IMG/VR virus record: IMGVR_UViG_3300030102_006934
Location: 124,001-188,000 of that record
Length of the DNA: 64,000 nucleotides
Reading direction: 5' to 3' (one strand)
Shown in pieces: positions 14,336 through 56,995 of the stretch; position 1 is the stretch's first letter; every line of letters starts with the position of its first letter. The translations under genes were made by a program, and so were the position numbers. A model generated the notes under the pieces. That model did not search any database. It was not told the DNA's origin and saw only the letters and a list, made by a program, of their open reading frames with translations.

Positions 14336-14343
14336 TACATTTA

Positions 14344-14363: not shown

Positions 14364-14367
14364 GAAT

Positions 14368-16242: not shown

Positions 16243-16284
16243 ATTTAAACAATAATAAACATATTTATATAAAAAGACAAAATT

Positions 16285-43444: not shown

Positions 43445-44257
43445 TTACTCCACGTTTTCCCCTGCGTATTTTATTCCTCTATCGTTTTTAAAATAACATT
43501 CTTTCTTTGAGGTATTGTACCAAAACTTGGATTCTAGTGGGTCCATGAAGTACTCTTTATCGTTTTTATATTTCCAAAATAAAGAATTCTCTCTCATATT
43601 ATATTTTTTATACCCTATTTTGGGTATAGTCATCATTGTTTTATCATAATAAGACATCCTTAGTAGGAATTCATAATTAAAGAACATTTTTACACTAGAC
43701 TTTAAACCACCCACCGAATTAAATGCTTCTGTTTTGATTATAGAACCACAAACTTGAAAGTTGGGGAAATTTAATAATGAGTCATAGTCTACGTAACCCA
43801 TTTTTTCACTAAAATCTCTTGCCCAGACAGGTTCATTACTAAAGTGTAAGAATTGATTTTCTTCATTCACATCTAACACTATAGGTAAGAATAAATCAAC
43901 ATTTTGATAGTGTTCTCTGTACTCGATGAAATTATCGAACCATATAGAAGAGTAAATATCATCCACTTCTAGAATTGAGAACCATTCGGTTTTACAATTT
44001 TCTACACCTAAATTTACTTGGCTAGAAAAATCTGTATCACCTTCATTTTCTAATACTGTTGTTATAGATTTAATTTCATCTGAAAAATCATAAGAGTCTA
44101 AAGTTTTTTTAGCGTCACTATTTTTAGGTACAACGATTAATAATTTTTCTACACCAACCTTTTGGTCCTCAATACTTTTTACGGCGTTAGCAAATAAATC
44201 TTTTTCTTTTTCATCCAATGTTAATATTGGCATTATTACTGTTAAATTAGTTTCCAT
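43445..44257 (-). CDS. glycosyltransferase family 2 (GT-A)
   Basis: LTVIMPI, AVKSI..Q, NLGVE..KTEWFSILEVDD. Confidence 0.8.
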   Translation of the reverse strand: METNLTVIMPILTLDEKEKDLFANAVKSIEDQKVGVEKLLIVVPKNSDAKKTLDSYDFSDEIKSITTVLENEGDTDFSSQVNLGVENCKTEWFSILEVDDIYSSIWFDNFIEYREHYQNVDLFLPIVLDVNEENQFLHFSNEPVWARDFSEKMGYVDYDSLLNFPNFQVCGSIIKTEAFNSVGGLKSSVKMFFNYEFLLRMSYYDKTMMTIPKIGYKKYNMRENSLFWKYKNDKEYFMDPLESKFWYNTSKKECYFKNDRGIKYAGENVE

Positions 44258-44260
44258 TTT

Positions 44261-45364
44261 TTAATTATTTTTTTCTTCTAAATTATTAACCTCATATTTG
44301 GCTAAAGTTTCTTTTATTTCTTTTTCTCTATTACTAAAAAGTTCACCATAAACAGATTCTACAGAACTTTTCATAATTGTTTCAGAGTAATCATCTACAG
44401 TTGTATCCATCTCCGAGAATATATCAGAAGGAACTGCGTCCTCCAACCAAGATTGTAGATATTGTGATAGTAATTCTGGGATAATGACTGTATTATCTAC
44501 CCATATACCATTTTTTTCGGTAATCCACCCATTTGATAGGTTAGGTAACTTACCAATGACAGGAGTTCCACAAGCCATTGATTCGATTGGAAATGTTCCG
44601 AATCCAGCTATATCATCAACCCATATAGAAACACACGACTCTTTTAAAGCTTCTGAAAAAACATCTTTTGTCATTCCACGCATATCTCTAAATGTAATCC
44701 ACTTTAAATGTGGATACTTAATATAAAAGTTTTTAAATATCTTAACAGTATCTCTTTGGTCTCTAGTCATTATAGCTACTATTGGTTTTTTTGGTTCGGT
44801 ATTTTTAACAAACCTTTTGTCGATACCCACTGGTACTACATTAGTGGTTACTTTACCATTAAAAAGATTGTCTATATACTCTTTTTGTTTTTCTGTTGTA
44901 GTCACACAATCAGTAATACCGTAATCTAACCAAGTCTTACCTGGTTGTAATGTTTCTGTTATATAATCATATGATTGGCAAAACACAACTCTTTTACCTG
45001 GTAAATTAACTGTCTGTTCCATAACATTAGCAAATAATTCTGGTACCATAATAATATCCGTCATATTTATTTTAACTTCTTTATCTTCTATCGATACGTG
45101 TGACAAAGAAGAGTATTCTTCACCTAACCAAGATTTAACATACTCTAGTTGTTTAGTTGAGTATTCATTTTTTTCATGTAATATATGTGCTTGGTAACCT
45201 AGTTCTGTTAACATTTTGACATGTTCATATATGTTAGCCACAGCACCAGTCGGTGCACCATTTGTGTCAATTACGAAGAAGTAGATTGAAAAATCTTTTT
45301 CTTCCATTTTCTTTAAATTTGTTTTTAATGTTTCTACAATTTCTTGTGTGTTTAATTTATCCAT
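44261..45364 (-). CDS. glycosyltransferase, GT-B (GT4-like)
   Basis: GAVANIYEH...GFGTFPIESMACGTPVI. Confidence 0.8.
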   Translation of the reverse strand: MDKLNTQEIVETLKTNLKKMEEKDFSIYFFVIDTNGAPTGAVANIYEHVKMLTELGYQAHILHEKNEYSTKQLEYVKSWLGEEYSSLSHVSIEDKEVKINMTDIIMVPELFANVMEQTVNLPGKRVVFCQSYDYITETLQPGKTWLDYGITDCVTTTEKQKEYIDNLFNGKVTTNVVPVGIDKRFVKNTEPKKPIVAIMTRDQRDTVKIFKNFYIKYPHLKWITFRDMRGMTKDVFSEALKESCVSIWVDDIAGFGTFPIESMACGTPVIGKLPNLSNGWITEKNGIWVDNTVIIPELLSQYLQSWLEDAVPSDIFSEMDTTVDDYSETIMKSSVESVYGELFSNREKEIKETLAKYEVNNLEEKNN

Positions 45365-45710: not shown

Positions 45711-45750
45711 ATTTTATATTTAATTAATTTTTATCATATGTAAACAGTTT

Positions 45751-46449
45751 TTATCGTAAATAAAGGTTGGGATCAGCTCCGCCGAGTACTAACTCAAAAT
45801 TATCTAAAAGTTCTCCATTTATTTCTTTAATTGTTTTTACCCTATAACCTGATTGTACTATTTTTTTATTATAATCTTTATCGATAACGATATTGAATTT
45901 ATCTAGTGGTTTAGTGTTTATAATTTTTGGGTGGTCAGTAATCATAATGTCTACATAGTCCCAAACCTTTTTATATTCGGTCACAAATTTTATGTTAGGA
46001 CAACTAGATTTTGTTTTAGCTAAAAAGAAGTGGGTAGAAGGTATTGCCATACCACCTTCTCTACTGATTATAATAAATTCATGTTGTGGATTATCTATAA
46101 TTAATCTGTTTAAAGATTCCACAGCAGAACTAACAGATTCTTCCGCATAACCAAAAACTTCTACGGTACATTTTTCATATAAAAACTCTTCTATAGTTAC
46201 TCTTGTTTTTTTTGTTTCTAATTTAATATCTTCTTTTTCTTTAACCAACTCCTCCTCGAAGTCTAAATCAAACTCAATTTCGTTTTGTTTAACCTCTTCT
46301 TCTGGGAAAGTTAACCATTTCTCTAAATCGTAATCTAAAACTTCTACAGTATCCTCCCCTTCCAAAGGTGGGAAGTATTTAGTGTGGGTCTCCTCTATTT
46401 TACCTAATAAGTCTCTTAATACACCATCTATTGATACACCTATTTTCAT
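45751..46449 (-). CDS. HAD-fold 5'(3')-nucleotidase-like protein with atypical motif I
   Basis: MKIGVSIDGVLRD, IIISRE, IMITDHP, YN. Confidence 0.6.
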   Translation of the reverse strand: MKIGVSIDGVLRDLLGKIEETHTKYFPPLEGEDTVEVLDYDLEKWLTFPEEEVKQNEIEFDLDFEEELVKEKEDIKLETKKTRVTIEEFLYEKCTVEVFGYAEESVSSAVESLNRLIIDNPQHEFIIISREGGMAIPSTHFFLAKTKSSCPNIKFVTEYKKVWDYVDIMITDHPKIINTKPLDKFNIVIDKDYNKKIVQSGYRVKTIKEINGELLDNFELVLGGADPNLYLR

Positions 46450-46451
46450 AA

Positions 46452-47234
46452 TTAACTTTTTAACAATACTTTATTATTATCAGTAGATTCGTCCAAATCA
46501 TCAAACACAGCCTCAATGGTTTTGATGATAGGGTTTCTAACCACGTCATTTGGGTCTCTAAGTTCTACACAACCAAAGTTGTCTATGTTATTAAACTTAT
46601 CTATAATCACCTCCAAAGAACTATCCTTTTTATTTCTTATGTCTTTTTGTTTAACATCACCTAAAATAACCATCTTCGAGTCATCACCTATACGTGTCAT
46701 TAAAGTCCTCATATTGTCTAATGTGATATTTTGTGCCTCATCAACAATTATAATAGTATTGTCAATACTCCTACCTCTAATGAATGCTAGGGGTTGAACA
46801 TTTATTAAACCTAGTTCTCTGAATTTACGAGTTAATGACTCACCAATTATCTTCTCAAAGTTATCTATAAAAGAACCTAAAAAAGGATCAAATTTTTCGT
46901 TTAAATCACCTGGTAAAGAACCTAACTCTTCATGTCTTAACTGAGTAATTGATTTAACTAAAAGTACTTTTTTATATTTAGGTTTTGATTTTATTAGCTT
47001 AAGTGCTTCAGCACAAGCGATGTAAGTTTTTCCAGTACCTGGTAAACCAGAAACAATGGTTATCTCATTGTTTCTTATTGAATCCCTAACTTTTCCTTGA
47101 TTTTCATTTTTACACTTATAGTGTACTGACATTGAGGTTAAGAACTTATCCTCTTCTTGGTTTTTTCTATATACGAATTCTTCTATTTGTTGTAAGTCTT
47201 CGTCTGATAGATTTTTATTTCTTCTTCTTGCCAT
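46452..47234 (-). CDS. phoH: PhoH-family ATPase
   Basis: GLPGTGKT, LGSLPGD, PLAFIRGRS, IIVDEAQN, TRIG, GDVKQ.D, VVRNP. Confidence 0.93.
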   Translation of the reverse strand: MARRRNKNLSDEDLQQIEEFVYRKNQEEDKFLTSMSVHYKCKNENQGKVRDSIRNNEITIVSGLPGTGKTYIACAEALKLIKSKPKYKKVLLVKSITQLRHEELGSLPGDLNEKFDPFLGSFIDNFEKIIGESLTRKFRELGLINVQPLAFIRGRSIDNTIIIVDEAQNITLDNMRTLMTRIGDDSKMVILGDVKQKDIRNKKDSSLEVIIDKFNNIDNFGCVELRDPNDVVRNPIIKTIEAVFDDLDESTDNNKVLLKS

Positions 47235-47298
47235 AAAATTTTATTATTAAATTAATTTAATAATGAAAATATACTAACATTATGTACAATGTACACAG

Positions 47299-47613
47299 TT
47301 ATTTAATAAAGGATTTTGGATCGTCAAAGAAATCTAGACTGTTAAATGTTTTGTCATCGACAAAAATATCAAAAAATGGTTTATCTAACCTTAATTCATG
47401 GTATTTCACACCAAAGTCTTTTAATTGTTGTTCAGTTAGTACCCTCCAATCAATACCACTAACTGCTCCTCTAGCAGTCCACATTGTTATATGATGGCCC
47501 TCATCATATAATTTATTCACTATATCTATATTTTTTTTTATCGGTTTAGATGAGTTGTAATCCGTTTTTTTAGTGTTGAAAATGGTTTCATCTATATCTA
47601 CGAATATTTTCAT
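47299..47613 (-). CDS. small HAD phosphatase (capsule-biosynthesis type)
   Basis: FVDIDETI, WTARG, KP..DIFVDDK. Confidence 0.8.
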   Translation of the reverse strand: MKIFVDIDETIFNTKKTDYNSSKPIKKNIDIVNKLYDEGHHITMWTARGAVSGIDWRVLTEQQLKDFGVKYHELRLDKPFFDIFVDDKTFNSLDFFDDPKSFIK

Positions 47614-48257
47614 TTCTTTATATTTGTGAATTTCATTATTTTATTATTGATAGTAATGTTCACATCACCAAATAGATTAGTTATGGAATCTTCGGTGAAA
47701 AAACTATAATGAGGGTTAGTTGAACTTTCCACAATACGATCTTTAGTTTTACAATAAGGAACTTCAAACACGAAGTATTTACTAACATTTTTAACAAATT
47801 GTACGAAGTCTTTTAATTGGTTTGTTGGTATGTGTTCTAAAGTGTGTATACAAAATAAAATATCAATATCTTTAGTTAATAGTGTTTCTTTATTTTCGTG
47901 AAATTCTATATAATTAGGTAATTCGTTTTTGATTATATCATGTGAATACAATGATATTTTTGGAAAATTTTTATTTACCTTCTTGAGGAAATCATAATTA
48001 GGTGGGGTACCTATCTCCAATAAGTTATTAATACTTATGTTTATTTTAGATAAATATTTAATATATGAATCGTTCCTAATTAAATTATTACCAAAACCAC
48101 TGACATGACTTTTTTGATGTTGGCTAATTTCTTCGTGTGAATAACCTTCGCAATCAACAAAAGTAAAATAACAATTAGAACATTTTAAAATATCACAATC
48201 AATTAGTTTATGTTTTAAAATATTATTTGTTACTGATTCACATATTGGGCATTTCAT
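47610..48257 (-). CDS. SAM-dependent methyltransferase with N-terminal Zn ribbon
   Basis: CPIC..CSNC, LLEIG, HTLEHIP, FVFEVP. Confidence 0.75.
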   Translation of the reverse strand: MKCPICESVTNNILKHKLIDCDILKCSNCYFTFVDCEGYSHEEISQHQKSHVSGFGNNLIRNDSYIKYLSKINISINNLLEIGTPPNYDFLKKVNKNFPKISLYSHDIIKNELPNYIEFHENKETLLTKDIDILFCIHTLEHIPTNQLKDFVQFVKNVSKYFVFEVPYCKTKDRIVESSTNPHYSFFTEDSITNLFGDVNITINNKIMKFTNIKK

Positions 48258-49267
48258 ATCAATTCCATCAACTTATCAAATACATTATGTGTCTCATTTA
48301 TTTCAATAAAATTATTATTATTTGTATCATCACAGAAATACCTTAATTTGGGGTGAGAGACTAAACTAATCGTTTTAATACCTAAACCATGAGACATCAT
48401 TTGACTATGTCCAGCACTACACAGTATTGTTTTCACTTTGGAATAGTTTTCTTTTATTTTAGTCTCATTACCACTAGAATTGTCTAATAATGGTATGTTA
48501 ATATTTGACGACCTTAAGTGGTTATAGAAATTTTTACTACCATCGTGGGACATATAAGCCACAGGTATATTTTTAGTGATACAATATTTAACTAATTTTG
48601 TTAATTCACTGTAAAATTTTGACTTACCTATTTTACCATATCTCCTCCATTCACGGTCATCTTTAATCTCTATAGTAATAAATTTTTTATTTTCTTCATC
48701 CATACTTGACGACCAAAACTCTTTTACATACCATATACTTGGGCAAAATTCAAATTTTACTTTATCAGAAAAATCAGAACCAATAATACCTAATAAACTA
48801 TTTCTATCACCATTATGTCTCATGGAGAAATGTTCGGCTTTATTTATCAATTTCTTAATGTTTTCTTTAAACAATGGTAATTTACTCTCTGTTTTAATTG
48901 AATTCTCTCTAGAAGACATAGTCATATCTTGCCCATAAAATAGGTTATAACCAATCGATATAACGTAAATTGGTTTATCAATCTTATCGTACATATCTTT
49001 AGGTATTACCCACTGCCAACCCGAAACATTGTTTGGTGCTGAATCAGGTAATATTAAACCACCCCCTCCAACTAATATGTAGTCAAACTTATTTAGTGAA
49101 TTTATTTTAGTTTCATTAAATGTGACTCTACAATCGAAATCAGTAAACTCACAATCAACACCGTCTAAGTATTTTTCTTGAAAATATTTCTTAGTTGACT
49201 TCCCTAGTATTAGGTCACCACTGTTGAATTTGGCTTGTGAGGCATATATATGTGCTATTTTTATCAT
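48254..49267 (-). CDS. polysaccharide pyruvyl transferase family protein
   Basis: NSGDLIL, ILVGGGGLI, SIG, FSMR, HS..MSHGLG. Confidence 0.7.
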   Translation of the reverse strand: MIKIAHIYASQAKFNSGDLILGKSTKKYFQEKYLDGVDCEFTDFDCRVTFNETKINSLNKFDYILVGGGGLILPDSAPNNVSGWQWVIPKDMYDKIDKPIYVISIGYNLFYGQDMTMSSRENSIKTESKLPLFKENIKKLINKAEHFSMRHNGDRNSLLGIIGSDFSDKVKFEFCPSIWYVKEFWSSSMDEENKKFITIEIKDDREWRRYGKIGKSKFYSELTKLVKYCITKNIPVAYMSHDGSKNFYNHLRSSNINIPLLDNSSGNETKIKENYSKVKTILCSAGHSQMMSHGLGIKTISLVSHPKLRYFCDDTNNNNFIEINETHNVFDKLMELI

Positions 49268-50115
49268 TTTCTAAGTGATTTTTGTTTTAATAATTCACCA
49301 CCCATTACTTTTCTTGGTCCATAACCTCCCATAGCTTTTTCAATATCCCTAATTGATTTAACTAATTTTATTAAACCTTGTGGTTCTACTGAAGCCATTT
49401 GGTCTGACCCCCATAAAGTTCTATCTGTTGTTATATGACGTTCAACCCACGTAGAGCCCAATAATATTGTGGAAACAGTTGTCATTAGACCAAACTCATG
49501 TCCTGAATAACCTACATCGACATTGGGTTTAGCTATAACATCTTTTATCCACTTTATATACTCTAAATTTAATTCATCTACTTGGGATGGGTATGTAGAG
49601 TTTGTATGCATTATTAAGTTTGGGTTACATGTATCTACACACTTAACAATCTCTTCTTCAGTACTCATACCAGTACTAATAATTAGGTATCTACATTTTT
49701 CTCTAGCATAAGAACATAAATCTAAATCAGTAATTAGAGCTGAGGGTATTTTCATTATGTCAGTAAATTTAGACATAAAGTCAACAGAATCTTTATCCCA
49801 AACTGAAGCAAACCATTTAATACCTTTTAACTTACAATAATTATCAATGTTAACATAATCACTATGTGTTAACTCTATATCTTTTTTATAATCTAAGTAA
49901 GTTATTTCTTCATCCCTCCATGGAACATTTTTAGGTTTATTTTTTTGTTCTTCTGGTACGCACACAATGGGGTTTCTTTTTTGAAACTTAACGTAATCAC
50001 AACCAGAAATGTAAGCTACATCAATTAATTTTTTAATGTTATCTAAAAAACCACTCTTATCTTTACCGTAAGCAAAATTAATACCAATCTCACCTATTAT
50101 TTTTGTCCTTTCCAT
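49264..50115 (-). CDS. neuB: nonulosonate (sialic acid-type) synthase, NeuB family, lacking the C-terminal SAF domain
   Basis: EIGIN, VKFQKR, KIPSA, ISTGM, HTNSTYP, GYSGHE, VERHIT, SDQMAS. Confidence 0.9.
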   Translation of the reverse strand: MERTKIIGEIGINFAYGKDKSGFLDNIKKLIDVAYISGCDYVKFQKRNPIVCVPEEQKNKPKNVPWRDEEITYLDYKKDIELTHSDYVNIDNYCKLKGIKWFASVWDKDSVDFMSKFTDIMKIPSALITDLDLCSYAREKCRYLIISTGMSTEEEIVKCVDTCNPNLIMHTNSTYPSQVDELNLEYIKWIKDVIAKPNVDVGYSGHEFGLMTTVSTILLGSTWVERHITTDRTLWGSDQMASVEPQGLIKLVKSIRDIEKAMGGYGPRKVMGGELLKQKSLRK

Positions 50116-50741: not shown

Positions 50742-51375
50742 GACCCTCTAGTTTGAAATTAATAAATGGGTTTATACTATAAACATTAACACCCAAAGAC
50801 TTTAATTTTTCTTTTAATATAACAGTATCCCTATCTAATTTATTCAACCATTCCTTATATTGTGACCAATCACTCCAAGGGGTTTCACTAATATTTTTAT
50901 AATAGTTTTTGAATGTGTGTTGCCCATCTAAAATACCGTGGTCAACTCCTATCAAAATAATGTTTTTAGCACCTAAATGATATGCGAAATGTATAGAAGA
51001 TGTTATAGTGGAATCACTAACAACTAAATGGTTGGGTTTATCGAAAGCTTTCAAATTTATTCTACTAACGTTAACTAAGTGGTCAAAATAATATAGTTTA
51101 TTTATATTATTATTTACATCTAAGGGTACCCCAGAGCCACAATTAAGTCTAGCCACTATTATATCAGAATTAGAATTTTTTAAAGTATCTCGTATTAGAG
51201 AATGTTCCTTCCTAACAATATAACTAGTATCAAATTTTCTGTAAGTTTGATTAGTTCCTACAGAAATTTTATTTTCTAAGAATGAGGGGTCTATAAAATC
51301 ACAAGATGGACCAGAACCAATAACATATATATCCTCCCCCTTATGTATGTTTTTAAATTTATTTATATCCTCCAT
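50725..51375 (-). CDS. Maf/DUF115-like putative nonulosonate transferase
   Basis: FKNIHKGE.IYVIGSGPS, AYHLGAKNIILIGVD. Confidence 0.7.
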   Translation of the reverse strand: MEDINKFKNIHKGEDIYVIGSGPSCDFIDPSFLENKISVGTNQTYRKFDTSYIVRKEHSLIRDTLKNSNSDIIVARLNCGSGVPLDVNNNINKLYYFDHLVNVSRINLKAFDKPNHLVVSDSTITSSIHFAYHLGAKNIILIGVDHGILDGQHTFKNYYKNISETPWSDWSQYKEWLNKLDRDTVILKEKLKSLGVNVYSINPFINFKLEGHVYKG

Positions 51376-51394
51376 TTATAGTTCTAATTTAGTT

Positions 51395-52072
51395 TTACCC
51401 CCATTTTTTATTAAAATTTTTACTTAAACCATGTGTCATTTCATTTTGTTTTTTAGGGTCAACTAATCCATGACTTTTACTTAAATGATGTAAAACTATA
51501 GAGTTTTTTATTAACCCATGTTTAATTTTATACTTTTGTAGATTCATAGAGTAGTCATTGTCTTGATACCAAAAAGAAAATTGTTCATCAAAATTACCTA
51601 TAATATCAATAACTTTTCTATTTAGTAAAATAGACCAGCCAGTCAATTCGTATGAAGTTCTATAACCATAAAAAACTTCTTTCTTCTCTTTAAAATTACT
51701 TTTATGGACATTCCATATTGGACAATAGGGGGACATTGATAATAATTCGTTGTCCTTTTCAAACTGTTTTAACATTTCTGAAAACCAACCACCAACGTAC
51801 TCAGTGTCATTATTAGATATCAATATCCATTCGTTTGTACAATAATTTAAACCTATATTTAAGAATTTATTATAATTAAATTCTCCTTTAGGTACGATGG
51901 TTTCGACCTCATCATAGTCGTACTTATATTTACCTGTTTTTTCTGTTTCTATAAGTTTTATACTAAAATTATGATTTTTTTCAGAGTTTAAGATACTCTC
52001 AACACACTGTTTAGTCATATTGTAAATTCTATCATCTTTTGTGTAAGTCAATAAAATAACATCTATTTTCAT
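51395..52072 (-). CDS. glycosyltransferase family 2
   Basis: IDVILLT, NIGL..CTNEWILISNND, FDEQF.FWYQDND. Confidence 0.85.
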   Translation of the reverse strand: MKIDVILLTYTKDDRIYNMTKQCVESILNSEKNHNFSIKLIETEKTGKYKYDYDEVETIVPKGEFNYNKFLNIGLNYCTNEWILISNNDTEYVGGWFSEMLKQFEKDNELLSMSPYCPIWNVHKSNFKEKKEVFYGYRTSYELTGWSILLNRKVIDIIGNFDEQFSFWYQDNDYSMNLQKYKIKHGLIKNSIVLHHLSKSHGLVDPKKQNEMTHGLSKNFNKKWG

Positions 52073-53616
52073 TATCCTCTGTTTTGATATATTGCTTGTA
52101 ATTGTTTTTGTACCATCTCTTGTGGTGTTAAAGGTGTTTCTGTTGGGGTAACACCATGTTTCTTTTTATACCACATAGTACCTTTCCTAAAGTTGTCATT
52201 CCATGTTGGTGTTCTAGCTATTGTGCTCTCTTCTATTGAATTGGGTATATCTGTCAAATACTCCCAACTTTTATCAATATCAGCGAAGTACCAAAAAGCT
52301 GGGTGATAACCCTTTTTAATCGTTTGATAGGTATGTTCTACATGTTCCCATGCGTTTTTAAAGTTAGGGTCAAAACCACCTATATCTTCTAGAACTGGTC
52401 TGTAATAATAAGAAAAGGCACCAACACAATTTGGGTATAAAGCGATACTTAACCTTGTTTGGTCACCTTCACTATCCTTATAAGGTACTAACATCCTAGG
52501 ATTAGGTTCCCCCTCACTATCTTCCCTATCTTCTAAACTTGTAAAACCTTTACTACCTTTTTTATTGGCTGGTCCATGTAAGGCAAAATTTAAATGTTTA
52601 ATACCAGAAACAAGAGAGTGTTTTATATACTCTTCAAATACCTTCTCATCTTTTATTAGAATATCATCTTCCATGATGAATATATGTTCACAATCAGTAT
52701 TTTCCAATAAGTAATTAATGGCTGTAGTTTTAGCCGCTCCTACTGATTTATTTACTTCGTGTTGTATTATCTTTGCGTGTTTAGGGTAAGAGTCTTCATT
52801 GTATGGTGTACCATCGTTCACAATTACAAAATTTTCTATCCAATCTGGAATAGTAAAGGCACTTTGTTTTATTCTATGTTCCGCATTGTAAGTTACCATA
52901 CCAAAACCAACAGATTTTGGGTCGAATTCTAACTTCTCCTCAAAGGTTTTATTTTTTGTTAACCTAATCGGTAATTTGTCTTTATACTTTTCTTCAAACC
53001 TTACTTTATGACCTTCCCATTGTTGGTTTGTCTGACCAATAGATAAATGTGTAATTCTTATCTGTGTTGTTAAACCTATTTTAACACCATCTAAGTAGTT
53101 TGGGAAACAAAAAGAAATATCATAGAAATGGAAACCATGAAACTCCTCATCGAAATTATGTTTTATTTTAGTTTTATCAACCCCAAAGAATAAACCATCT
53201 AAAACAACCATATCGGTTATTTTTTTACCTTGGTCTTTTGAGTAATAATTAGTCCATTTTTTACCTTCGTTTTGGTGAGACACTATCCCATTCATGGATT
53301 CTTTGATTGTCCACCATCTACCATCGACTAAATCTGTTGTACCCGCTATACCGATAATACCATATTTAGGGTTTTTTTCAAATAAGGATTTTAATTTCCT
53401 ACCCCAGTTTTTAGTATCGAAAATAATGTCATCATGACAAAAAACCACAATATCATTTGTGGTTTGTTCTAAACCTTTGTTATAGGCTTGTGTTAATGAC
53501 ATCTCGCCATCATTAATGATTTGTATCACCTCTATTTTATGAACACCAGAGGTTTTTTTAATATCTTCAATAAAATTGGGTTTATCTCTTTTTGTTGAAT
53601 ATACTACACTAATCAT
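52072..53616 (-). CDS. two-domain glycosyltransferase (two GT-A domains)
   Basis: AYNKG..VFCHDD..LDG..FHFYD; second domain VNDG..IFIMEDD..GGFD..WEH. Confidence 0.82.
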   Translation of the reverse strand: MISVVYSTKRDKPNFIEDIKKTSGVHKIEVIQIINDGEMSLTQAYNKGLEQTTNDIVVFCHDDIIFDTKNWGRKLKSLFEKNPKYGIIGIAGTTDLVDGRWWTIKESMNGIVSHQNEGKKWTNYYSKDQGKKITDMVVLDGLFFGVDKTKIKHNFDEEFHGFHFYDISFCFPNYLDGVKIGLTTQIRITHLSIGQTNQQWEGHKVRFEEKYKDKLPIRLTKNKTFEEKLEFDPKSVGFGMVTYNAEHRIKQSAFTIPDWIENFVIVNDGTPYNEDSYPKHAKIIQHEVNKSVGAAKTTAINYLLENTDCEHIFIMEDDILIKDEKVFEEYIKHSLVSGIKHLNFALHGPANKKGSKGFTSLEDREDSEGEPNPRMLVPYKDSEGDQTRLSIALYPNCVGAFSYYYRPVLEDIGGFDPNFKNAWEHVEHTYQTIKKGYHPAFWYFADIDKSWEYLTDIPNSIEESTIARTPTWNDNFRKGTMWYKKKHGVTPTETPLTPQEMVQKQLQAIYQNRG

Positions 53617-53785
53617 TTTTAAATTTATGTTTTTTAATTTTACCTAACTTGGTTTCGATGTCAATTATTTTTTGTTTTAACCATTCTATGGTCCATCCAT
53701 CTAACCTATCCCTCATTGAAAACTCTATTTTAATTTTTTTTAAATAAGTCTCTAACCTATTTTTTTCTGTCTCTGAAAAAATCAT
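53609..53785 (-). CDS. small hypothetical protein (58 aa, not in ORF track) MIFSETEKNRLETYLKK...KND
   Basis: hand-translated; ATGA overlap with the upstream stop; overlaps the downstream start. Confidence 0.6.
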   Translation of the reverse strand: MIFSETEKNRLETYLKKIKIEFSMRDRLDGWTIEWLKQKIIDIETKLGKIKKHKFKND

Positions 53786-54276
53786 TTTTTAACTTCCATT
53801 ATATTGATAGGTTCTTCACAATAAACAGATAGATGACAAGCGGCTTTTATTGACTCTTTAACGGAGTTACCTAAATAAAGTGCTGCTAATGAAAAATCCA
53901 TTCCTGCTCCAATGGCGGTATAATCTGTTATTTCTTTAACAAAAAATCCCTCAACTAAGAAGGCTTTCTTTTCTAAAACTAAAACATACTCATTCCTTAA
54001 TTTACTTTCATCTGTTTTGTTCTTCATCCATTCTTGGAACTCGGACATAAATTCTATTAAAGCCTCAACAGAAGCCTCTCTAGGTTTACGTGTTTTACAA
54101 AACATAAGAAATAAACCACCTTCTTGTGCATCACCCACATCACCGATTATAATATCATTTACCTTATTTAATTTAGCAAATTTATCTTTTTCTTGTGTGG
54201 TACCATGGGATACTAATATACTATCAGCTCCAATGGTTATTTTTTTATCCGTTACTTTAATTGCTACAACACTCAT
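53782..54276 (-). CDS. HslV/proteasome-beta-like Ntn hydrolase with Ser at position 1
   Basis: S1-VVAI..IGAD17-S, K34, GDVG, AIGAG..ALYLG. Confidence 0.65.
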   Translation of the reverse strand: MSVVAIKVTDKKITIGADSILVSHGTTQEKDKFAKLNKVNDIIIGDVGDAQEGGLFLMFCKTRKPREASVEALIEFMSEFQEWMKNKTDESKLRNEYVLVLEKKAFLVEGFFVKEITDYTAIGAGMDFSLAALYLGNSVKESIKAACHLSVYCEEPINIMEVKK

Positions 54277-54854
54277 TACATTCTACCAGTTGAACCAAAA
54301 CCACCTAAACCTCTTTCAGACTCAGTTAACTCTTTAACTTCCTCTAACTCACCAAAATCCGTACTAACTCTAGATGTTATTACTCCTTGAGCTATTCTCT
54401 CACCTATATCCCAAGTAAAATCTTCATCACTCAAATTAACTAAAAGTACTTTTATTTCACCTCTATAACCAGTGTCTACTGTACCTGGTGAATTTAATAC
54501 TGTTATACCATTTTTATAGGCTAAACCACTTCGAGGTCTAATTTGTAATTCGTAACCCTCTTGTAACTCAAAATAAAGTCCTGTAGGAACTAATTTCCTT
54601 TCTAAAGACTTTAGTGTACCACCTTCATTAGCTCTTAAGTCAAAACCAGAATCACCTTCTTTGGCATAAGTTGGGTTTTTGTTTTCTGATTTATTAATAA
54701 ATTTAGTTTTTATTTTGTTAGACTCTTGTTTATAGTGACTAACTTCTCTCATTAAAGACAAAGCTTGTTCTATTTCCGCTTTTTGTTCATCATGTAATAA
54801 GTCTAAAGTTAGTAACCTCTCTAACTCTTCTATTTGTTCTTTAATTTCAGCCAT
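54276..54854 (-). CDS. dut: dUTPase (trimeric)
   Basis: SGFDL, RPRSG, GTVDTGYRGEI, RIAQ, RG.GGFGSTG. Confidence 0.95.
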   Translation of the reverse strand: MAEIKEQIEELERLLTLDLLHDEQKAEIEQALSLMREVSHYKQESNKIKTKFINKSENKNPTYAKEGDSGFDLRANEGGTLKSLERKLVPTGLYFELQEGYELQIRPRSGLAYKNGITVLNSPGTVDTGYRGEIKVLLVNLSDEDFTWDIGERIAQGVITSRVSTDFGELEEVKELTESERGLGGFGSTGRM

Positions 54855-55564
54855 TATTTTAAATCATTAATTTTAGTAATTATATCAACTAAAGCCTTAA
54901 CATCACGTTCACAATATTCTTTAATTTCTTCGTGTTTACCTTCCCAATAACCAGTGGTTACACTATCACCTTTAACATCACCGTTTTTAGGTGAGTCTAT
55001 GTCTAAAGCTGAACATACTAAATCTAAAGAACTTAGTGACCAATTATTACCAAATTGCCAAACTTCTTTGGTGTCCACAACTTTAATTTCCCAAGGTTTT
55101 GTCTCATGTGTGGGAAATATTTTTGGTGTTTTAAGACCGTTTATGAAAAACCTTTTACCTAAAAATGGTATGTCAAACATTTTTATACTTTGGCCACATA
55201 GGTCGAAACCAAGTGACTCTACTTTATCAAAAACTTTTCTAGTATTTAACAATATCTCCATTTCATCTTCCCCATAAAATGATTCATATCTAACTTCACC
55301 TTCTTTAGTAACAAAGGCCATAGAAACACAAGCTACCTTACCAAATTCTGGGAAAAAAGCTGCTGTTTGTCTATACACTTCTTGGAATATCTCTTTATCC
55401 CCCATATCTAATTTTATTTTAGACTCTTCTGTAACCCTCTTCCGAAATGAGTTATAATATCTCATCCACATTTGAAAGTCTCTTTCTGGTAAATCGTACA
55501 AATCTTTATACTGACTCACCGTTTCTATATCAAAAAATAATAATTTATCTACTTTAAACTGCAT
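54854..55564 (-). CDS. PolB-related stand-alone 3'-5' exonuclease
   Basis: FFDIETV, FDIPFL, EYCERDV (DEDDy). Confidence 0.85.
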   Translation of the reverse strand: MQFKVDKLLFFDIETVSQYKDLYDLPERDFQMWMRYYNSFRKRVTEESKIKLDMGDKEIFQEVYRQTAAFFPEFGKVACVSMAFVTKEGEVRYESFYGEDEMEILLNTRKVFDKVESLGFDLCGQSIKMFDIPFLGKRFFINGLKTPKIFPTHETKPWEIKVVDTKEVWQFGNNWSLSSLDLVCSALDIDSPKNGDVKGDSVTTGYWEGKHEEIKEYCERDVKALVDIITKINDLK

Positions 55565-56873
55565 TTGTTTCTTCTATTAATTGTTTTACTTCTTTTTTAT
55601 TGTTTTCTAGTATTTTCTTATAGAATTCAGCTCTTTTTTTAGTTACTGTGTCTATATGATACTTGTCTTTCACGGTATTATACAAATTATTTTGTAATAA
55701 ATCAACTAATTCTGGATTTTCTATCAATTTTTTCATTGATTTAAACCAATCTTTATGGTTTTTGTGTTTTTCTATTAAAATAGCGTTACCATTTTCATTT
55801 ATAGTACCACCTCGTTCTATTAGATTAATACAATCTATTTGATATGGCCCAAAGTCTTGTGCTATTAAAGCTTTTTTATGGAATCCAGCTTCAATTACTT
55901 TTAACTGTGACTTCATTAAATTAAAAGTATGATCTTTAAGTGGTGCCATCGATACATCAAATAAATTATAGTTTGAAGCAAAAGTGGTTATTGGTTGTGT
56001 CCAAACTCTTCTGTACAAATCATCTTTAATACCCATTTTCTCTTCATTTTCTCTATCATATTTAACTAAAACATTAGAGTATTCAGAATTAACTAATTTT
56101 AAGTTATTTGTGAACATATCTTCATATCTAGACCACACACTTTCTCTTGGTGTAATCGGTCTGGTTTTTTGTTGTCCAGTATTTCTATCTATTTCTGTTA
56201 TATTACCTCTAGTATCAAAACCACATAAAACAAACTGAGTTTTATCTTTATAGGTTTTTAAAAATTGTGAAACACCAGAACTCATTAATTTTAAATCATG
56301 TTCATGTGAAGAACCACCTAACCAGCCAAATCTAAGTTCTTTGTTAGTTTTTTCAGGGTTTGGTGTAAATTGTTTCTCAGAAGGGTCAATAGCATTTGGT
56401 AAGACTACAACATTTTTATTGTACTTACCTATTTCTTTGGCGAAAATAGGTGTAGTTGTTGTTACAAAATCAGCTCTTTTTAAATTTTCTTTTATTTTAT
56501 GTGGTAAATTTTCCCTAACCATTAACTGATAGGCTGGGTGTTCCTTAGTTGGTGACCAATAATCATCTAAATCCATTACGGTTAAGATGTTTAATGATTT
56601 TAATTTATCTAAAATTTTAAAAGAATCCTCTAAATAGGTTTGTTTTACTTGATTATTTTCTCTTTTTGGAATCGTCCTATGAAAATGTACAATATCATAG
56701 TTTTTATAAACTGACTCATCTTCCCAATCAAATTCTATCGTACCAGCAGTTATTATATCTACATGGAAATCCTCACCATATAATTCTTGTAATTTTGTGT
56801 GTGGCTCTACTGAACGAAATTTAGAGACACCAGTCCTATCTGATGGTAGGACTAAAACTTTGATTTTACTCAT
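55554..56873 (-). CDS. glycosyltransferase, GT-B
   Basis: GVSKFR..P, DLDD.W, PNAID, GWLGGSSH..D, APL....FN..KSQLKVIEAG. Confidence 0.82.
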   Translation of the reverse strand: MSKIKVLVLPSDRTGVSKFRSVEPHTKLQELYGEDFHVDIITAGTIEFDWEDESVYKNYDIVHFHRTIPKRENNQVKQTYLEDSFKILDKLKSLNILTVMDLDDYWSPTKEHPAYQLMVRENLPHKIKENLKRADFVTTTTPIFAKEIGKYNKNVVVLPNAIDPSEKQFTPNPEKTNKELRFGWLGGSSHEHDLKLMSSGVSQFLKTYKDKTQFVLCGFDTRGNITEIDRNTGQQKTRPITPRESVWSRYEDMFTNNLKLVNSEYSNVLVKYDRENEEKMGIKDDLYRRVWTQPITTFASNYNLFDVSMAPLKDHTFNLMKSQLKVIEAGFHKKALIAQDFGPYQIDCINLIERGGTINENGNAILIEKHKNHKDWFKSMKKLIENPELVDLLQNNLYNTVKDKYHIDTVTKKRAEFYKKILENNKKEVKQLIEETNAV

Positions 56874-56935
56874 ACTATATATTTTTTAAAAATATAGTTA
56901 AATATGAGTTTTAGTAAATAATAAACTTAAAGTTA

Positions 56936-56989: not shown

Positions 56990-56995
56990 TTTTTT

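What the first reader, a model, noticed from the sequence alone, without database searches (positions are those of the whole stretch)
43445..56873. Phage-encoded nonulosonic-acid (sialic-acid-like) glycosylation pathway
Seen: co-oriented NeuB, NeuA, a Maf/DUF115-like transferase, a pyruvyl-transferase-like gene, a methyltransferase, a HAD phosphatase and five GT genes (six GT domains). NeuB lacks the SAF domain and has GINFAYG instead of the usual NHxG. No NeuC epimerase is present in the window. Known: Maf proteins attach nonulosonates to flagellin Ser/Thr, and Bacteroides makes KDN with a 9-phosphate synthase, a HAD phosphatase and a CMP-synthetase. Inference: the phage makes CMP-KDN or a related sugar and builds a decorated glycan, most likely on its own virion; host-surface or DNA modification are alternatives.
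Basis: partly seen in the sequence, partly recalled or inferred. Interest (0 to 1): 0.7.

Follow-up and report, generated by a model that had tools for sequence, protein, structure and literature searches.

The report
Phage sialic-acid-like glycan gene island
A 380-kb marine jumbo phage carries its own genes to make an activated sialic-acid-like sugar and attach it to a decorated glycan, and the same core genes recur in many uncultured large aquatic viruses; the exact sugar and what receives it are not yet known.

Summary
On the minus strand lie NeuB (no SAF domain), a CMP-sialate synthetase, a 216-aa sialyltransferase-like protein, a pyruvyl transferase, a methyltransferase, an intact 104-aa HAD phosphatase and five GT genes (six GT domains). 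They are interrupted by PhoH, dUTPase, an exonuclease and a degenerate HAD.

The window belongs to a CheckV-complete 380-kb virus record. That genome has no NeuC, NanE, PseB/LegB-type dehydratase or DegT aminotransferase. It also has no Wzx, Wzy/WaaL, WbaP or WecA.

New findings:
- NeuB, NeuA, the mini-HAD and a sialyltransferase-like gene form a portable core. In flank-complete viral loci NeuA is present in 49/50, the HAD in 39/50 and a sialyltransferase-like gene in 41/50. In cellular loci the HAD is present in 1/20.
- The genes between the core genes form a hypervariable glycan-tailoring cassette.
- The "Maf-like" protein matches Cst-II/Cst-I (GT42) best, not full-length Maf.
- GINFAYG marks an all-viral subclade with a six-residue insertion.

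Best reading: host sugar-6-phosphate plus PEP gives a nonulosonate-9-P, which is dephosphorylated, CMP-activated and transferred in the cytoplasm. KDN is the likeliest sugar but is unproven. The acceptor is unresolved: virion about 0.45, host envelope about 0.35, DNA unlikely.

The parts
49264..50115 (-). NeuB-family nonulosonate synthase. It is a TIM barrel with a short basic C-terminal tail and no SAF/antifreeze-like domain. It belongs to the N[F/Y] subclade, which carries a six-residue insertion after GEIGIN.
   Evidence: PF03102 2.7e-58. TIGR03569 scores 167.6 bits (cut-off 399.65) and TIGR03586 scores 122.1 bits (cut-off 340.25). PDB sequence hits and aligned His206/His227. Alignment A2. 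Tree. AF2 model and Foldseek match to 6NCS, TM 0.82.
50097..50741 (-). CMP-nonulosonate synthetase (NeuA/CMAS family). It overlaps the start of NeuB.
   Evidence: PDB 1EYR E=4.1e-10 over residues 4-207. TIGR03584 PseF 1e-9. Homologues at 43-46% identity in other viral loci carry PF02348.
50725..51375 (-). Minimal (216 aa) sialyltransferase-like protein of the MptE/DUF115 - GT42 fold superfamily. It is the presumed CMP-nonulosonate transferase.
   Evidence: PF01973 34.7 bits. Family profile A1 matches Cst-II, Cst-I and P. multocida sialyltransferase at E=5e-6 to 3e-5 over nearly full length, and Maf 5MU5 at E=0.76. AF2 model pLDDT 93.4. Foldseek hits to MptE HPPK, Maf, Cst-II and GT29 at TM 0.36-0.53.
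47299..47613 (-). Capless 104-aa HAD phosphatase with all catalytic motifs. It is the presumed nonulosonate-9-phosphate (or sugar-phosphate) phosphatase.
   Evidence: TIGR01689 EcbF/BcbF 3e-6 and BT0820 family (weak). Invariant D6, D8, T10, T46, K70, D86 in A4. PDB 9IQW 'capsule biosynthesis protein' 5.4e-18. Linked to NeuB in 39/50 viral and 1/20 cellular loci.
48254..49267 (-). Polysaccharide pyruvyl transferase (adds a pyruvate ketal and uses PEP).
   Evidence: PF04230 4.2e-11, residues 15-304 against profile positions 1-278 of 280. A homologue lies directly next to NeuB in 8 of the 80 IMG/VR loci, 1.7 kb upstream in L016, and 1.8 kb upstream in L002.
47610..48257 (-). SAM-dependent methyltransferase with an N-terminal Cys4 ribbon. 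It is the presumed glycan O-methyltransferase and lies in a variable slot.
   Evidence: PF13489 1.9e-6. It is only 48% identical in the otherwise ~90% identical relative L005, which also has an extra methyltransferase here.
51395..52072 (-). GT2 (GT-A fold) glycosyltransferase.
   Evidence: PF00535 4.5e-6. Whole-genome PF00535 hit.
52072..53616 (-). Two-domain GT2 glycosyltransferase.
   Evidence: N-terminal domain: PF13712 1.8e-27 and PF00535 9.6e-10. C-terminal half (residues 225-514): nearest ESM Atlas clusters are viral GT2 families, score 0.99.
44261..45364 (-). GT-B fold (GT4/GT1-clan) glycosyltransferase.
   Evidence: PF00534 21.6 bits, below the cut-off. ESM Atlas: viral GT1/GT4 clusters, with structure TM 0.73-0.94 for a neighbouring cluster.
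43445..44257 (-). GT2 glycosyltransferase.
   Evidence: PF10111 2.4e-7 (31 bits against cut-off 27.3) and PF00535.
55554..56873 (-). GT-B fold glycosyltransferase, separated from the core by three unrelated genes.
   Evidence: phrog_7162 'glycosyltransferase' 9.5e-43. ESM Atlas: viral GT1-clan clusters. Conserved upstream of the core in the window-type lineage.
45751..46449 (-). NT5C-like HAD-fold protein lacking both catalytic aspartates. It is probably not a phosphatase. It is conserved together with PhoH between the mini-HAD and the distal GT pair.
   Evidence: PF06941 24.6 bits. In the family alignment the motif-I position reads SIDGV or TINNI (one member EINGV) where the canonical motif is DxDxV.
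46452..47234 (-). PhoH-like ATPase. It is an interspersed gene and is not assigned to the pathway.
   Evidence: PF02562 6.9e-56.
53782..55564 (-). Interspersed non-glycan genes: a 164-aa unknown protein, dUTPase and a PolB-exo-like 3'-5' exonuclease.
   Evidence: PF00692 2.4e-25 and NF001862 1e-49. PF10108 4.8e-12.

Best explanation
This is the only glycan locus of a roughly 380-kb marine jumbo phage.

**Core pathway.** The core is a self-contained pathway for a CMP-activated nine-carbon keto-sugar (nonulosonate).
1. The SAF-less NeuB condenses PEP with a sugar taken from host metabolism. Because a phosphatase is tied to it, the substrate is most likely a hexose-6-phosphate: mannose-6-P giving KDN-9-P, or less likely ManNAc-6-P giving Neu5Ac-9-P.
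2. The 104-aa HAD removes the phosphate.
3. NeuA makes the CMP-sugar.
4. The 216-aa GT42-like enzyme transfers it, probably as a cap.

**Rest of the glycan.** Four GT2 domains and two GT-B enzymes build the remainder, and a pyruvyl transferase and a methyltransferase decorate it. All of these proteins are predicted soluble, so assembly is cytoplasmic.

**Acceptor.** The acceptor is most likely a phage-made protein of the virion, as with giant-virus fibrils and mycobacteriophage capsids.

**Evolution.** The core genes travel together between unrelated large aquatic viruses. The genes between them are swapped freely, which gives strain-specific glycans.

**Shown:** gene identities, intact catalytic motifs, lack of precursor and export genes in the complete genome, core linkage and cassette variability.

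**Inferred:** the phosphorylated route, KDN as the sugar, capping by the GT42-like enzyme, and the virion as target.
For: - Gene identities.
- The complete genome has one NeuB and no NeuC, NanE, PF01370 SDR or DegT. The sugar skeleton must therefore come from the host.
- Mini-HAD linkage: 39/50 viral against 1/20 cellular NeuB loci. NeuA is present in 49/50 viral loci and a sialyltransferase-like gene in 41/50.
- The HAD motifs are intact.
- Some viral loci hold only NeuA, NeuB and the HAD contiguously, spanning 1.46-1.77 kb.
- The core is found next to gp23, prohead protease and DnaJ in a different phage lineage. NeuB is 67-72% identical there, although the capsid proteins are unrelated by BLAST.
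- The same NeuB and HAD occur in huge phage LR756508.1 beside four GT29-like genes.
- Cassette variability: 213 accessory ORFs fall into 107 clusters. The most frequent Pfam families are all glycan-related: GT2, methyltransferases, SDRs, hexapeptide acyltransferases, GT29, GDP-mannose dehydratase, GT8, pyruvyl transferase and DegT.
- No protein of the finding's interval (43445-56873) has a transmembrane-grade hydrophobic segment.
- Wzx, Wzy/WaaL, WbaP and WecA families are absent.
- The phage recurs in at least 20 marine metagenome runs from 8 studies.
- Precedents: giant-virus cytoplasmic glycosylation (PMC9614988), and mycobacteriophage virion glycans as cited in PMC12619734.
Against: **Sugar identity**
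- NeuB is below the equivalog cut-offs for both NeuB and PseI.
- The nearest cellular relatives lie beside DegT, PseB-like and NTP-transferase genes, a legionaminic-acid-like context.
- No residue distinguishes HAD-linked from HAD-less NeuBs.
- Some viral loci carry the HAD together with DegT/PseB genes.
- The HAD belongs to a different subfamily from the characterised KDN-9-P or Neu5Ac-9-P phosphatases. Its nearest solved relative is only named 'capsule biosynthesis protein'.

**Target**
- The nearest solved relatives of the transferase act on lipooligosaccharide, not protein.
- The block lacks the ATATTTAT upstream motif that precedes the structural genes. It is packed together with dUTPase, an exonuclease and PhoH downstream of PolB.
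- No Ser/Thr-rich acceptor tract was found in structural proteins.
- Evidence of transcription is limited to two 166-nt contigs in one RNA library, which may be DNA carry-over.
Confidence: 0.5

Rival explanations
1. The pathway is the same, but the glycan is put on the host envelope during infection. Targets could be lipooligosaccharide or LPS core, an Und-PP-linked O-unit, capsule, pilin or an S-layer. Host carriers, flippases and ligases would be used. The effect would be to mask receptors, which excludes superinfection and stops progeny being lost on cell debris.
For: - The transferase family profile matches the LOS sialyltransferases Cst-II, Cst-I and the P. multocida enzyme best.
- The block lacks the motif that precedes structural genes. 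It lies in a tight run with replication-type genes, and a TTGACA-16-TAAAAT site lies upstream of the GT2 pair.
- Published work on pelagimyophages favoured host O-chain modification for phage GTs (PMC7029224).
- Strain-level variability resembles that of O-antigen loci.
Against: - The complete genome has no membrane-embedded or export component.
- The core moves between viral lineages with presumably different hosts, and into giant-virus MAG contigs. A host-specific acceptor would make that hard.
- A lytic phage leaves little time for new envelope material to reach the surface (inference).
- The sigma-70-like site lies within a small ORF, and such sites are not enriched in the region: 92 found against 90.9 expected.
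Confidence: 0.33
2. The nonulosonate is not KDN or Neu5Ac. It is a 5,7-diamino sugar (legionaminic or pseudaminic type) made from a host-supplied 2,4-diacetamido-2,4,6-trideoxyhexose. The mini-HAD would then have another role, for example freeing a sugar from a phosphate ester before condensation.
For: - Cellular NeuBs 55-56% identical to the window's enzyme sit beside DegT, PseB/PglF-like, cupin-isomerase and NTP-transferase genes.
- The active-site and tail residues are identical between the viral and cellular groups.
- Several viral loci carry DegT, PseB and acetyltransferase genes.
Against: - This genome has none of the precursor enzymes.
- A host able to supply the precursor would already have its own synthase.
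- 9-deoxy nonulosonates cannot carry a 9-phosphate. That leaves the virus-specific HAD linkage (39/50 against 1/20) unexplained.
- The DegT and formyltransferase genes in other loci fit separate NDP-sugar branches equally well.
Confidence: 0.2
3. The glycosyltransferases hypermodify the phage DNA with a glycan, as in T-even phages and their relatives, to evade restriction.
For: - Phage GTs can build multi-sugar glycans on 5-hmC DNA (Pyle et al. 2024, cited in PMC12619734).
- The block is interspersed with nucleotide-metabolism genes (dUTPase, NT5C-like, PhoH).
Against: - The genome has a single thymidylate-synthase homologue. It passes the ThyA equivalog cut-offs (TIGR03284, 327.6 bits against 108), so there is no dCMP or dUMP hydroxymethylase.
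- The dUTPase is canonical.
- The NT5C-like protein lacks its catalytic aspartates.
- In other lineages the same core lies beside capsid genes.
- No nonulosonate on DNA is known (own knowledge).
Confidence: 0.03
4. The block is cellular DNA that was mis-assembled or mis-binned into a viral contig, so it is not a phage feature.
For: NeuB-family genes in viromes have been discussed in the context of cellular contamination (PMC3877843). Some close NeuB relatives are filed in bacterial and archaeal MAGs.
Against: - G+C content and strand skew are continuous with the flanks.
- The block lies between PolB and a baseplate hub on one strand.
- An independent Logan contig (L005) reproduces 11 kb of it at 45-96% protein identity, with the same order.
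- About 25 further viral contigs of up to 299 kb keep the synteny.
- The stretch is found in many marine runs.
Confidence: 0.01

Closest known systems
KDN pathway of Bacteroides thetaiotaomicron and Prymnesium parvum (KDN-9-P synthase, KDN-9-P phosphatase, CMP-KDN synthetase), and the animal NANS/NANP/CMAS route
   Same: A NeuB-family synthase, a HAD phosphatase and a CMP-synthetase, with no 2-epimerase. The pathway starts from a hexose-6-phosphate of central metabolism (PMC6200933).
   Different: The phosphatase here is a 100-aa capless HAD of the TIGR01689/9IQW type, not the KdsC-like BT1713 or NANP type. NeuB lacks the SAF domain. The genes are viral. The substrate was not tested, and membership of the KDN-9-P synthase clade could not be tested because no reference sequences were available.
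Campylobacter jejuni Cst-II / Cst-I and the Pasteurella multocida sialyltransferase (GT42)
   Same: The profile matches over nearly full length (E=5e-6 to 3e-5). The N-terminal G-x-G-P-S nucleotide-binding motif and the G-(I/V)-D motif align. The fold superfamily is the same.
   Different: Identity is about 15% and TM only 0.45-0.53. The protein is about 45 residues shorter than the Cst-II catalytic core and has no C-terminal membrane-association region. The aligned position of the Cst-II catalytic His is not conserved in the consensus. The invariant residues are G22, S24, N42, A131, G135 and D145.
Maf (motility-associated factor) flagellin nonulosonate transferases, DUF115
   Same: Shares the PF01973 domain and fold (Foldseek hit to 5MU5). 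Its genomic partners are also NeuB and NeuA.
   Different: Only the central catalytic domain is present: 216 aa against 666 aa. The profile E-value to Maf is 0.76. There are no flagellin-binding domains and no flagellar context.
Virus-encoded cytoplasmic glycosylation machineries of giant viruses (Mimivirus fibril glycans, the chlorovirus Vp54 glycan, the predicted Kdo pathway of CroV and Fadolivirus)
   Same: The virus supplies sugar activation, soluble multi-domain GTs and methyltransferases, arranged in clade-specific clusters. CroV is predicted to encode a synthase, a phosphatase and a CMP-synthetase for a related keto-sugar (PMC9614988). NeuB relatives at 56% identity occur on giant-virus MAG contigs.
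   Different: The host here is a bacterium. The sugar is a nine-carbon NeuB product, not Kdo. No virion glycan has been observed.
Mycobacteriophage virion glycosylation (Freeman et al. 2023, cited in PMC12619734)
   Same: Phage-encoded glycosyltransferases are proposed to decorate the phage's own structural proteins in the cytoplasm.
   Different: Those systems have no nonulosonate pathway. Their acceptors are C-terminal tracts of the capsid and tail-tube proteins, and no comparable tract was found here.
SAF-less NeuB of Leptospira borgpetersenii (PDB 6NCS)
   Same: Same architecture: a TIM barrel plus a short tail, about 285 aa. It is the best structural match (TM 0.82/0.81).
   Different: Identity is 26%. 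The Leptospira enzyme has the canonical N-terminal motif region, and its substrate is not known to me.

Membership tests
NeuB family (PF03102) PEP-condensing nonulosonate synthases | TIM-barrel NeuB domain above the Pfam cut-off | tested here: met
   197.7 bits against cut-off 22.1. AF2 model TM 0.82 to 1XUU, 6NCS and 8H2C.
NeuB family (PF03102) PEP-condensing nonulosonate synthases | The two metal-binding histidines and the K-x-Q / S-T-G / E-x-H active-site motifs are conserved | tested here: met
   H206 and H227 align with the His of PseI and NeuB. K43, Q45, K46, S147, G149, H206, E225 and H227 are invariant or nearly so across 98 sequences.
N-acetylneuraminate synthase equivalog (TIGR03569) / classical bacterial NeuB | Score above the equivalog cut-off, and a C-terminal SAF (antifreeze-like) domain that supplies the Arg contacting the N-acetyl group | tested here: not met
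   167.6 bits against cut-off 399.65. The protein ends at residue 283 with no SAF domain.
Pseudaminic acid synthase PseI (TIGR03586) | Score above the equivalog cut-off, and PseB/C/H/G partners present | tested here: not met
   122.1 bits against cut-off 340.25. The genome has no PF01370 or PF01041 gene.
KDN-9-phosphate / Neu5Ac-9-phosphate synthase route | A dedicated phosphatase is genetically coupled to the synthase, and no 2-epimerase is present | tested here: met
   The intact HAD lies two genes downstream. Linkage is 39/50 in viral loci. NeuC and NanE are absent.
KDN-9-phosphate / Neu5Ac-9-phosphate synthase route | The enzyme uses Man-6-P or ManNAc-6-P, and it clusters with characterised 9-P synthases | not testable with these tools
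   No assay was possible. The Wang et al. 2008 paper is not held.
CMP-sialate synthetase (CTP_transf_3 / NeuA) | Full-length homology to a solved CMP-NeuAc synthetase, including the N-terminal P-A-R-x-G-S-K-G-x-x-x-K-N loop | tested here: met
   1EYR E=4e-10 over residues 4-207. The motif IPARKGSKGVPFKN is visible. The window's protein gives no Pfam hit (none up to E=0.01), but homologues carry PF02348.
HAD phosphatase superfamily | Motifs I (DxDxT), II (S/T), III (K) and IV (DD) | tested here: met
   D6, D8, T10, T46, K70 and D86 are invariant in A4. 9IQW 5.4e-18 and 1XPJ 2e-5.
GT42 sialyltransferases (Cst-II type) | Significant full-length similarity, the CMP-binding N-terminal motif, and the catalytic His188 equivalent | tested here: inconclusive
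   Profile E=5e-6 over 190 of 219 positions, with the G-x-G-P-S motif aligned. However, TM is only about 0.5, and the catalytic His position is not conserved in the alignment shown.
Maf flagellin glycosyltransferases | Multi-domain architecture with acceptor-binding domains around DUF115, in a flagellar context | tested here: not met
   Only 216 aa. E=0.76 to 5MU5. No flagellar genes in the neighbourhood.
Polysaccharide pyruvyl transferase (PF04230) | Full-length match above the cut-off | tested here: met
   43.7 bits against cut-off 25.3, covering profile positions 1-278 of 280.
Lipid-linked surface polysaccharide (Wzx/Wzy or O-antigen) loci | An initiating phosphoglycosyl transferase, a flippase, and a polymerase or ligase | tested here: not met
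   PF02397, PF00953 and PF01943 are absent. PF04932 gives only a 14.8-bit hit containing a stop codon. No transmembrane segments in the cluster.
DNA-glycosylating phage systems (T-even type) | A dCMP or dUMP hydroxymethylase providing the acceptor base | tested here: not met
   There is a single PF00303 gene, and it is a canonical ThyA.

The most novel reading that the evidence does not exclude
Large aquatic viruses share a portable 'viral sialome' module of NeuB, mini-HAD phosphatase, NeuA and a minimal sialyltransferase. The carriers include at least three unrelated lineages of jumbo or huge phages, and possibly some giant viruses. With this module they coat their own virions with KDN-type, methylated and pyruvylated glycans. 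The tailoring genes are exchanged so fast that closely related phages differ. This would be a viral counterpart of O-antigen diversity, perhaps tuning adsorption, stickiness to particles or mucus, or avoidance of grazers and decoys.
Probability: 0.3. Interest if true: 0.8.

Novelty: new variant of a known kind. Interest (0 to 1): 0.62.

Why it matters
Sialic-acid-like sugars are classic tools of cell-surface identity and mimicry. A phage that makes and transfers its own has not, to my knowledge or in the literature I could search, been analysed. neuB and neuA appear only as table entries in a 2013 virome survey (PMC3877843), and 'glycosyltransferases' are mentioned in passing in papers on pelagimyophages and moraphages.

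The module is common. The search returned 7,883 NeuB-family proteins at E<=1e-10 among the 8,000 scored, cellular relatives included, and the 120 best are SAF-less homologues at 61-96% identity. Ninety-eight IMG/VR stretches encode a relative, and the best 80 were kept as loci. Yet the module is absent from cultured phages: only 2 of 50,697 records match, and both are uncultured.

If the glycan sits on virions, it adds an acidic, strain-variable coat to abundant marine viruses. That would bear on adsorption, aggregation, carbon export and host range. If it sits on the host, it is a new form of lytic-phage seroconversion.

The four small, soluble core enzymes are also easy targets for biochemistry. 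They could also be useful for chemo-enzymatic sialoside synthesis.

Tried and rejected
- **DNA similarity to known phages:** blastn of the core against 50,697 phage records found nothing.
- **Single-sequence PDB searches** for the two GT-B proteins, the pyruvyl transferase and the two-domain GT2 gave nothing useful.
- **GT42-like versus GT29-like homology:** an hhalign test against the GT29-like proteins of related phages was not significant (probability 1%). I treat them as separate families.
- **T4-type late promoter:** TATAAATA is not enriched (24 found against 17.7 expected). A different motif, ATATTTAT, is enriched.
- **Sigma-70 and terminator scans** are at background level.
- **Ser/Thr-rich acceptor tracts:** the scan of all ORFs mostly returned spurious antisense ORFs, with no convincing acceptor.
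- **Residues specific to HAD-linked NeuBs:** none found, so the sequence gives no handle on a phosphate-binding site.
- **NeuB-HAD complex prediction:** I re-ran it with the window's own two proteins only. The verdict was 'no answer' (score 0.00), which is evidence neither for nor against binding.
- **Metatranscriptome check:** only two 166-nt contigs matched. They cannot be told apart from DNA carry-over.
- **Wang et al. 2008 (B. thetaiotaomicron KDN)** is not held, and a search for PDB code 9IQW found no relevant paper.
- **Phylogeny against characterised KDN, Neu, Leg and Pse synthases** could not be done, because no reference sequences could be brought in without typing them from memory.
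- **Cellular contamination** is rejected (see the rival explanations).

Full report
**What the window is.** The 64-kb window is bases 124,001-188,000 of a single 380,343-bp IMG/VR virus record that CheckV rates 100% complete. It encodes a large terminase, a portal, a gp23-type major capsid protein, a family-B DNA polymerase and a gp5-like baseplate hub. G+C is about 30% throughout, and strand skew follows gene orientation. The capsid protein is closest to those of the uncultured huge phage LR756508.1, Microcystis phage Mel-JY01 and Flavobacterium phage immuto, at 42-45% identity. The stretch studied here occurs in at least 20 marine or seawater metagenome runs from eight studies between 2014 and 2023. 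It is therefore a real, recurrent marine jumbo phage.

**Check of the observation.** Every gene from 37.4 to 62.2 kb is on the minus strand. In the direction of transcription the order is:
- GT-B glycosyltransferase, 55554-56873 (phrog_7162 9.5e-43; viral GT1-clan neighbours in the ESM Atlas)
- exonuclease
- dUTPase
- a 164-aa unknown protein
- two-domain GT2, 52072-53616 (PF13712 1.8e-27; C-terminal half also GT2-like)
- GT2, 51395-52072
- a 216-aa MptE/DUF115-like protein, 50725-51375
- NeuA, 50097-50741 (1EYR 4e-10)
- NeuB, 49264-50115 (PF03102 2.7e-58)
- pyruvyl transferase, 48254-49267
- methyltransferase, 47610-48257
- 104-aa HAD, 47299-47613
- PhoH
- an NT5C-like protein
- a 117-aa unknown protein
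- GT-B, 44261-45364
- GT2, 43445-44257

The interval is not a pure operon of glycan genes, however. All three PF00535 hits of the whole genome lie in this block, so this is the phage's only glycan locus.

**NeuB.** The protein is 283 aa: a TIM barrel followed by a short helix, with no SAF domain. The AF2 model has pLDDT 91.6. Its best structural match is the equally SAF-less Leptospira NeuB 6NCS (TM 0.82/0.81), followed by N. meningitidis NeuB and C. jejuni PseI. The metal-binding histidines and the other active-site motifs are conserved.

In alignment A2 it is a six-residue insertion (modelled with low confidence) in which the canonical His is replaced by Phe or Tyr. In the tree of 98 NeuBs this variant marks a clade that is viral except for one MAG-filed contig, which itself has a virus-like core. 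Most other viral relatives keep GINHNG.

The family ends in a conserved basic tail (R268, E274, K277, R282 invariant). The closest cellular relatives share this tail.

NeuB scores 167.6 bits on the NeuB equivalog model (cut-off 399.65) and 122.1 bits on PseI (cut-off 340.25). It is a member of the NeuB superfamily but of neither curated orthologue group.

**The 'Maf-like' gene.** PF01973 is only just reached (34.7 against 34.6 bits). A profile of 34 family members matches the GT42 sialyltransferases Cst-II and Cst-I of C. jejuni and the P. multocida enzyme at E=5e-6 to 3e-5 over nearly its whole length. The nucleotide-binding G-x-G-P-S motif is aligned. Maf (5MU5) scores E=0.76.

The AF2 model (pLDDT 93.4) finds MptE pyrophosphokinase, Maf, Cst-II and animal GT29 enzymes, all at a modest TM of 0.36-0.53. 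I read it as a minimal catalytic domain of the sialyltransferase/DUF115 fold superfamily. It has none of Maf's acceptor-binding domains and lacks the membrane-association region of Cst-II.

**The phosphatase.** The 104-aa protein has all four HAD motifs. Its family profile matches PDB 9IQW, named only 'capsule biosynthesis protein', at 5.4e-18. It also matches 1XPJ and, weakly, BT0820, and it hits TIGR01689. It is thus not the KdsC-like type of the Bacteroides KDN-9-P phosphatase.

The second HAD-like gene (45751-46449) lacks both catalytic aspartates in all 19 family members aligned. It is probably not a phosphatase.

**What is missing.** The complete genome has one NeuB. It has no NeuC, NanE, PF01370 epimerase/dehydratase, DegT aminotransferase or GT29. 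It also has none of the following families:
- WbaP-type initiating transferase
- WecA-type initiating transferase
- Wzx flippase
- Wzy/WaaL polymerase or ligase

No protein of the finding's interval has a hydrophobic segment of transmembrane grade. The only thymidylate-synthase homologue passes the ThyA equivalog cut-offs, and the dUTPase is canonical.

**Relatives.** The 120 best NeuB homologues listed in the metagenome search are SAF-less proteins at 61-96% identity to the window's enzyme. In all, 7,883 proteins scored E<=1e-10 among the 8,000 scored. Among 50,697 deposited phage genomes only two match, and both are uncultured.

Contexts fall into several architectures:
- **The window's own arrangement**, including PhoH, the degenerate HAD and the distal GT pair, recurs in about 25 IMG/VR contigs of up to 299 kb. 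It also recurs in a Logan contig (L005) that is 45-96% identical protein by protein.
- **A different lineage** places the core directly beside the genes for gp23, the prohead protease and DnaJ. Its capsid protein is closest to those of Lak-like huge phages (32-38% identity), and it resembles the recently described 'moraphages' (PMC12619734). NeuB is 67-72% identical there, NeuA 43-46%, the mini-HAD 50-58% and the GT42-like protein 25-27%, although the capsid proteins do not match by BLAST.
- **Huge phage LR756508.1** has NeuB and the HAD surrounded by four GT29-like genes, GDP-mannose dehydratase and an epimerase.
- **Two giant-virus MAG contigs** also carry the NeuB.

Counting only loci with at least 6 kb on both sides of NeuB:

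| Gene linked to NeuB | Viral loci (n=50) | Cellular loci (n=20) |
|---|---|---|
| NeuA | 49 | 12 |
| mini-HAD | 39 | 1 |
| GT42-like or GT29-like | 41 | 6 |

**A variable cassette.** In the 55 viral loci that hold NeuA, NeuB and the HAD within 14 kb, the core spans from 1.46 kb (the three genes contiguous) to 11.6 kb. The 213 genes lying between the core genes fall into 107 clusters at 40% identity.

The most frequent Pfam families among them are all glycan-related: GT2, several methyltransferase families, SDR epimerases/dehydratases, hexapeptide acyltransferases, GT29, GDP-mannose dehydratase, GT8, pyruvyl transferase and DegT.

Even the nearest relative, L005, differs here. Its methyltransferase is 48% identical, it has an extra methyltransferase, and its HAD is 63% identical. 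The flanking genes are 83-96% identical.

**How it most likely works.** The gene identities are shown, and the following steps are inferred from them:
1. The phage has no enzyme to make a special hexose, and a functional phosphatase is tied to its synthase in a virus-specific way. The most economical route is therefore the phosphorylated one known from animals, B. thetaiotaomicron and Prymnesium (PMC6200933). A host hexose-6-phosphate plus PEP gives a nonulosonate-9-phosphate.
2. The HAD gives the free sugar.
3. NeuA gives the CMP-sugar.
4. The GT42-like enzyme transfers it.

Mannose-6-P is universal, which makes KDN the best guess. ManNAc-6-P (giving Neu5Ac) is possible. The other six GT domains, the pyruvyl transferase and the methyltransferase would build and decorate the rest of the glycan in the cytoplasm.

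**Why the sugar is uncertain.**
- Cellular NeuBs 55-56% identical to this one lie beside DegT, PseB/PglF-like, cupin-isomerase and NTP-transferase genes, which is a legionaminic-acid-like setting.
- No residue separates HAD-linked from HAD-less enzymes.
- Some viral loci combine the HAD with DegT/PseB genes.

I put KDN or Neu5Ac via a 9-phosphate at roughly 0.6 (KDN about 0.45) and a 5,7-diamino sugar at about 0.2.

**What is glycosylated.** This is not resolved.

For virion (or other phage) proteins:
- The machinery is entirely soluble, and the genome has no carrier, flippase or ligase.
- The core is portable between viruses of presumably different hosts, including giant-virus contigs.
- It is adjacent to capsid genes in one lineage and to baseplate genes here.
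- There are precedents in giant viruses, whose machineries include methyltransferases, and in mycobacteriophages.

For the host envelope:
- The nearest solved relatives of the transferase act on lipooligosaccharide.
- The block lacks the ATATTTAT motif. That motif sits 12-27 nt upstream of 71 of 357 genes, among them the terminase, the portal and other structural genes.
- The block is packed with replication-type genes.

DNA glycosylation is unlikely, because there is no hydroxymethylase. I estimate virion 0.45, host envelope 0.33-0.35, DNA 0.03 and other 0.15.

**Comparison and novelty.** Each enzyme family is known, and the pathway logic is that of the KDN and animal sialic-acid routes. What appears new:
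- the viral setting
- the virus-specific pairing of a SAF-less NeuB with a 100-aa HAD
- the minimal sialyltransferase
- the organisation as a conserved core around a hypervariable tailoring cassette, shared by unrelated large aquatic viruses

My literature searches found no description of this. They found only a virome table listing neuB and neuA (PMC3877843) and general remarks on phage glycosyltransferases. I rate it a new variant of a known kind, with interest 0.62.

Noticed in passing
whole genome; in the window e.g. upstream of 1380, 2966, 8627, 21279, 23459, 25373, 26197, 27747, 34543, 62363 (+) and of 59295, 42629, 38935 (-): The motif ATATTTAT(A) lies 12-27 nt upstream of the start codons of 71 of 357 genes, a 16-fold enrichment. 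The genes include the terminase, the portal and other structural genes. It looks like a phage (late?) promoter or leader element. It is absent from 43445-57541.
   Followed up: partly
whole genome upstream regions: TATATTTG is 10-fold enriched upstream of genes. It fits the Bacteroidota -7 promoter box TAnnTTTG. Together with capsid similarity to a Flavobacterium phage and 30% G+C, this hints at a Bacteroidota (Flavobacteriia) host.
   Followed up: partly
window 45751-46449: An NT5C-like HAD-fold protein whose whole family has lost both catalytic aspartates of motif I (SIDGV / TINNI). It is conserved next to PhoH between the mini-HAD and the distal GT pair in about 25 related phage contigs. 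It may be a pseudo-enzyme or a binding protein.
   Followed up: partly
window 53782-54276: A 164-aa protein that is 90% conserved in the relative L005. Its N-terminus (SVVAIKV...TIGADS) recalls Ntn-hydrolase or HslV-like proteases. It gave no family hit in the Pfam or NCBIfam scans.
   Followed up: no
window 53617-53781: The 165-nt 'gap' upstream of the two-domain GT2 contains a small ORF that overlaps the GT2 start (ATGA). It also contains the best sigma-70-like site of the region (TTGACA-16-TAAAAT, 53664-53637).
   Followed up: no
L001 (LR756508.1 310778-335581), about 9250-16420: This huge phage has four tandem GT29-type (animal-like) sialyltransferase-like genes of 210-249 aa around NeuB. 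It also has GDP-mannose 4,6-dehydratase, an epimerase, and a GIY-YIG/HTH gene inserted right after NeuB.
   Followed up: partly
L089, L091 (IMG/VR GVMAG contigs): Contigs labelled as giant-virus MAGs carry a SAF-less NeuB 56% identical to the phage enzyme.
   Followed up: no
window 10359-12824: The phage encodes an 821-aa ClpB/Clp-like ATP-dependent protease or chaperone (phrog_4871, E=7e-263).
   Followed up: no
window 31604-33406: The major capsid protein is 600 aa. The gp23 domain covers only about residues 340-590, so there is an N-terminal extension of about 340 residues of unknown role.
   Followed up: no
window 38959-40113: This protein has a gp5/VgrG-type OB domain (PF04717, 24.8 bits). 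A baseplate hub therefore lies downstream of the glycan block on the same strand.
   Followed up: no
L092, L103 (genome contigs): Contigs filed under SAR202 and Pacearchaeota MAGs carry virus-like NeuA and GT42-like genes with very strong matches (1e-56 to 6e-80). L103 also has the mini-HAD. They are probably mis-binned viral contigs or proviruses.
   Followed up: no
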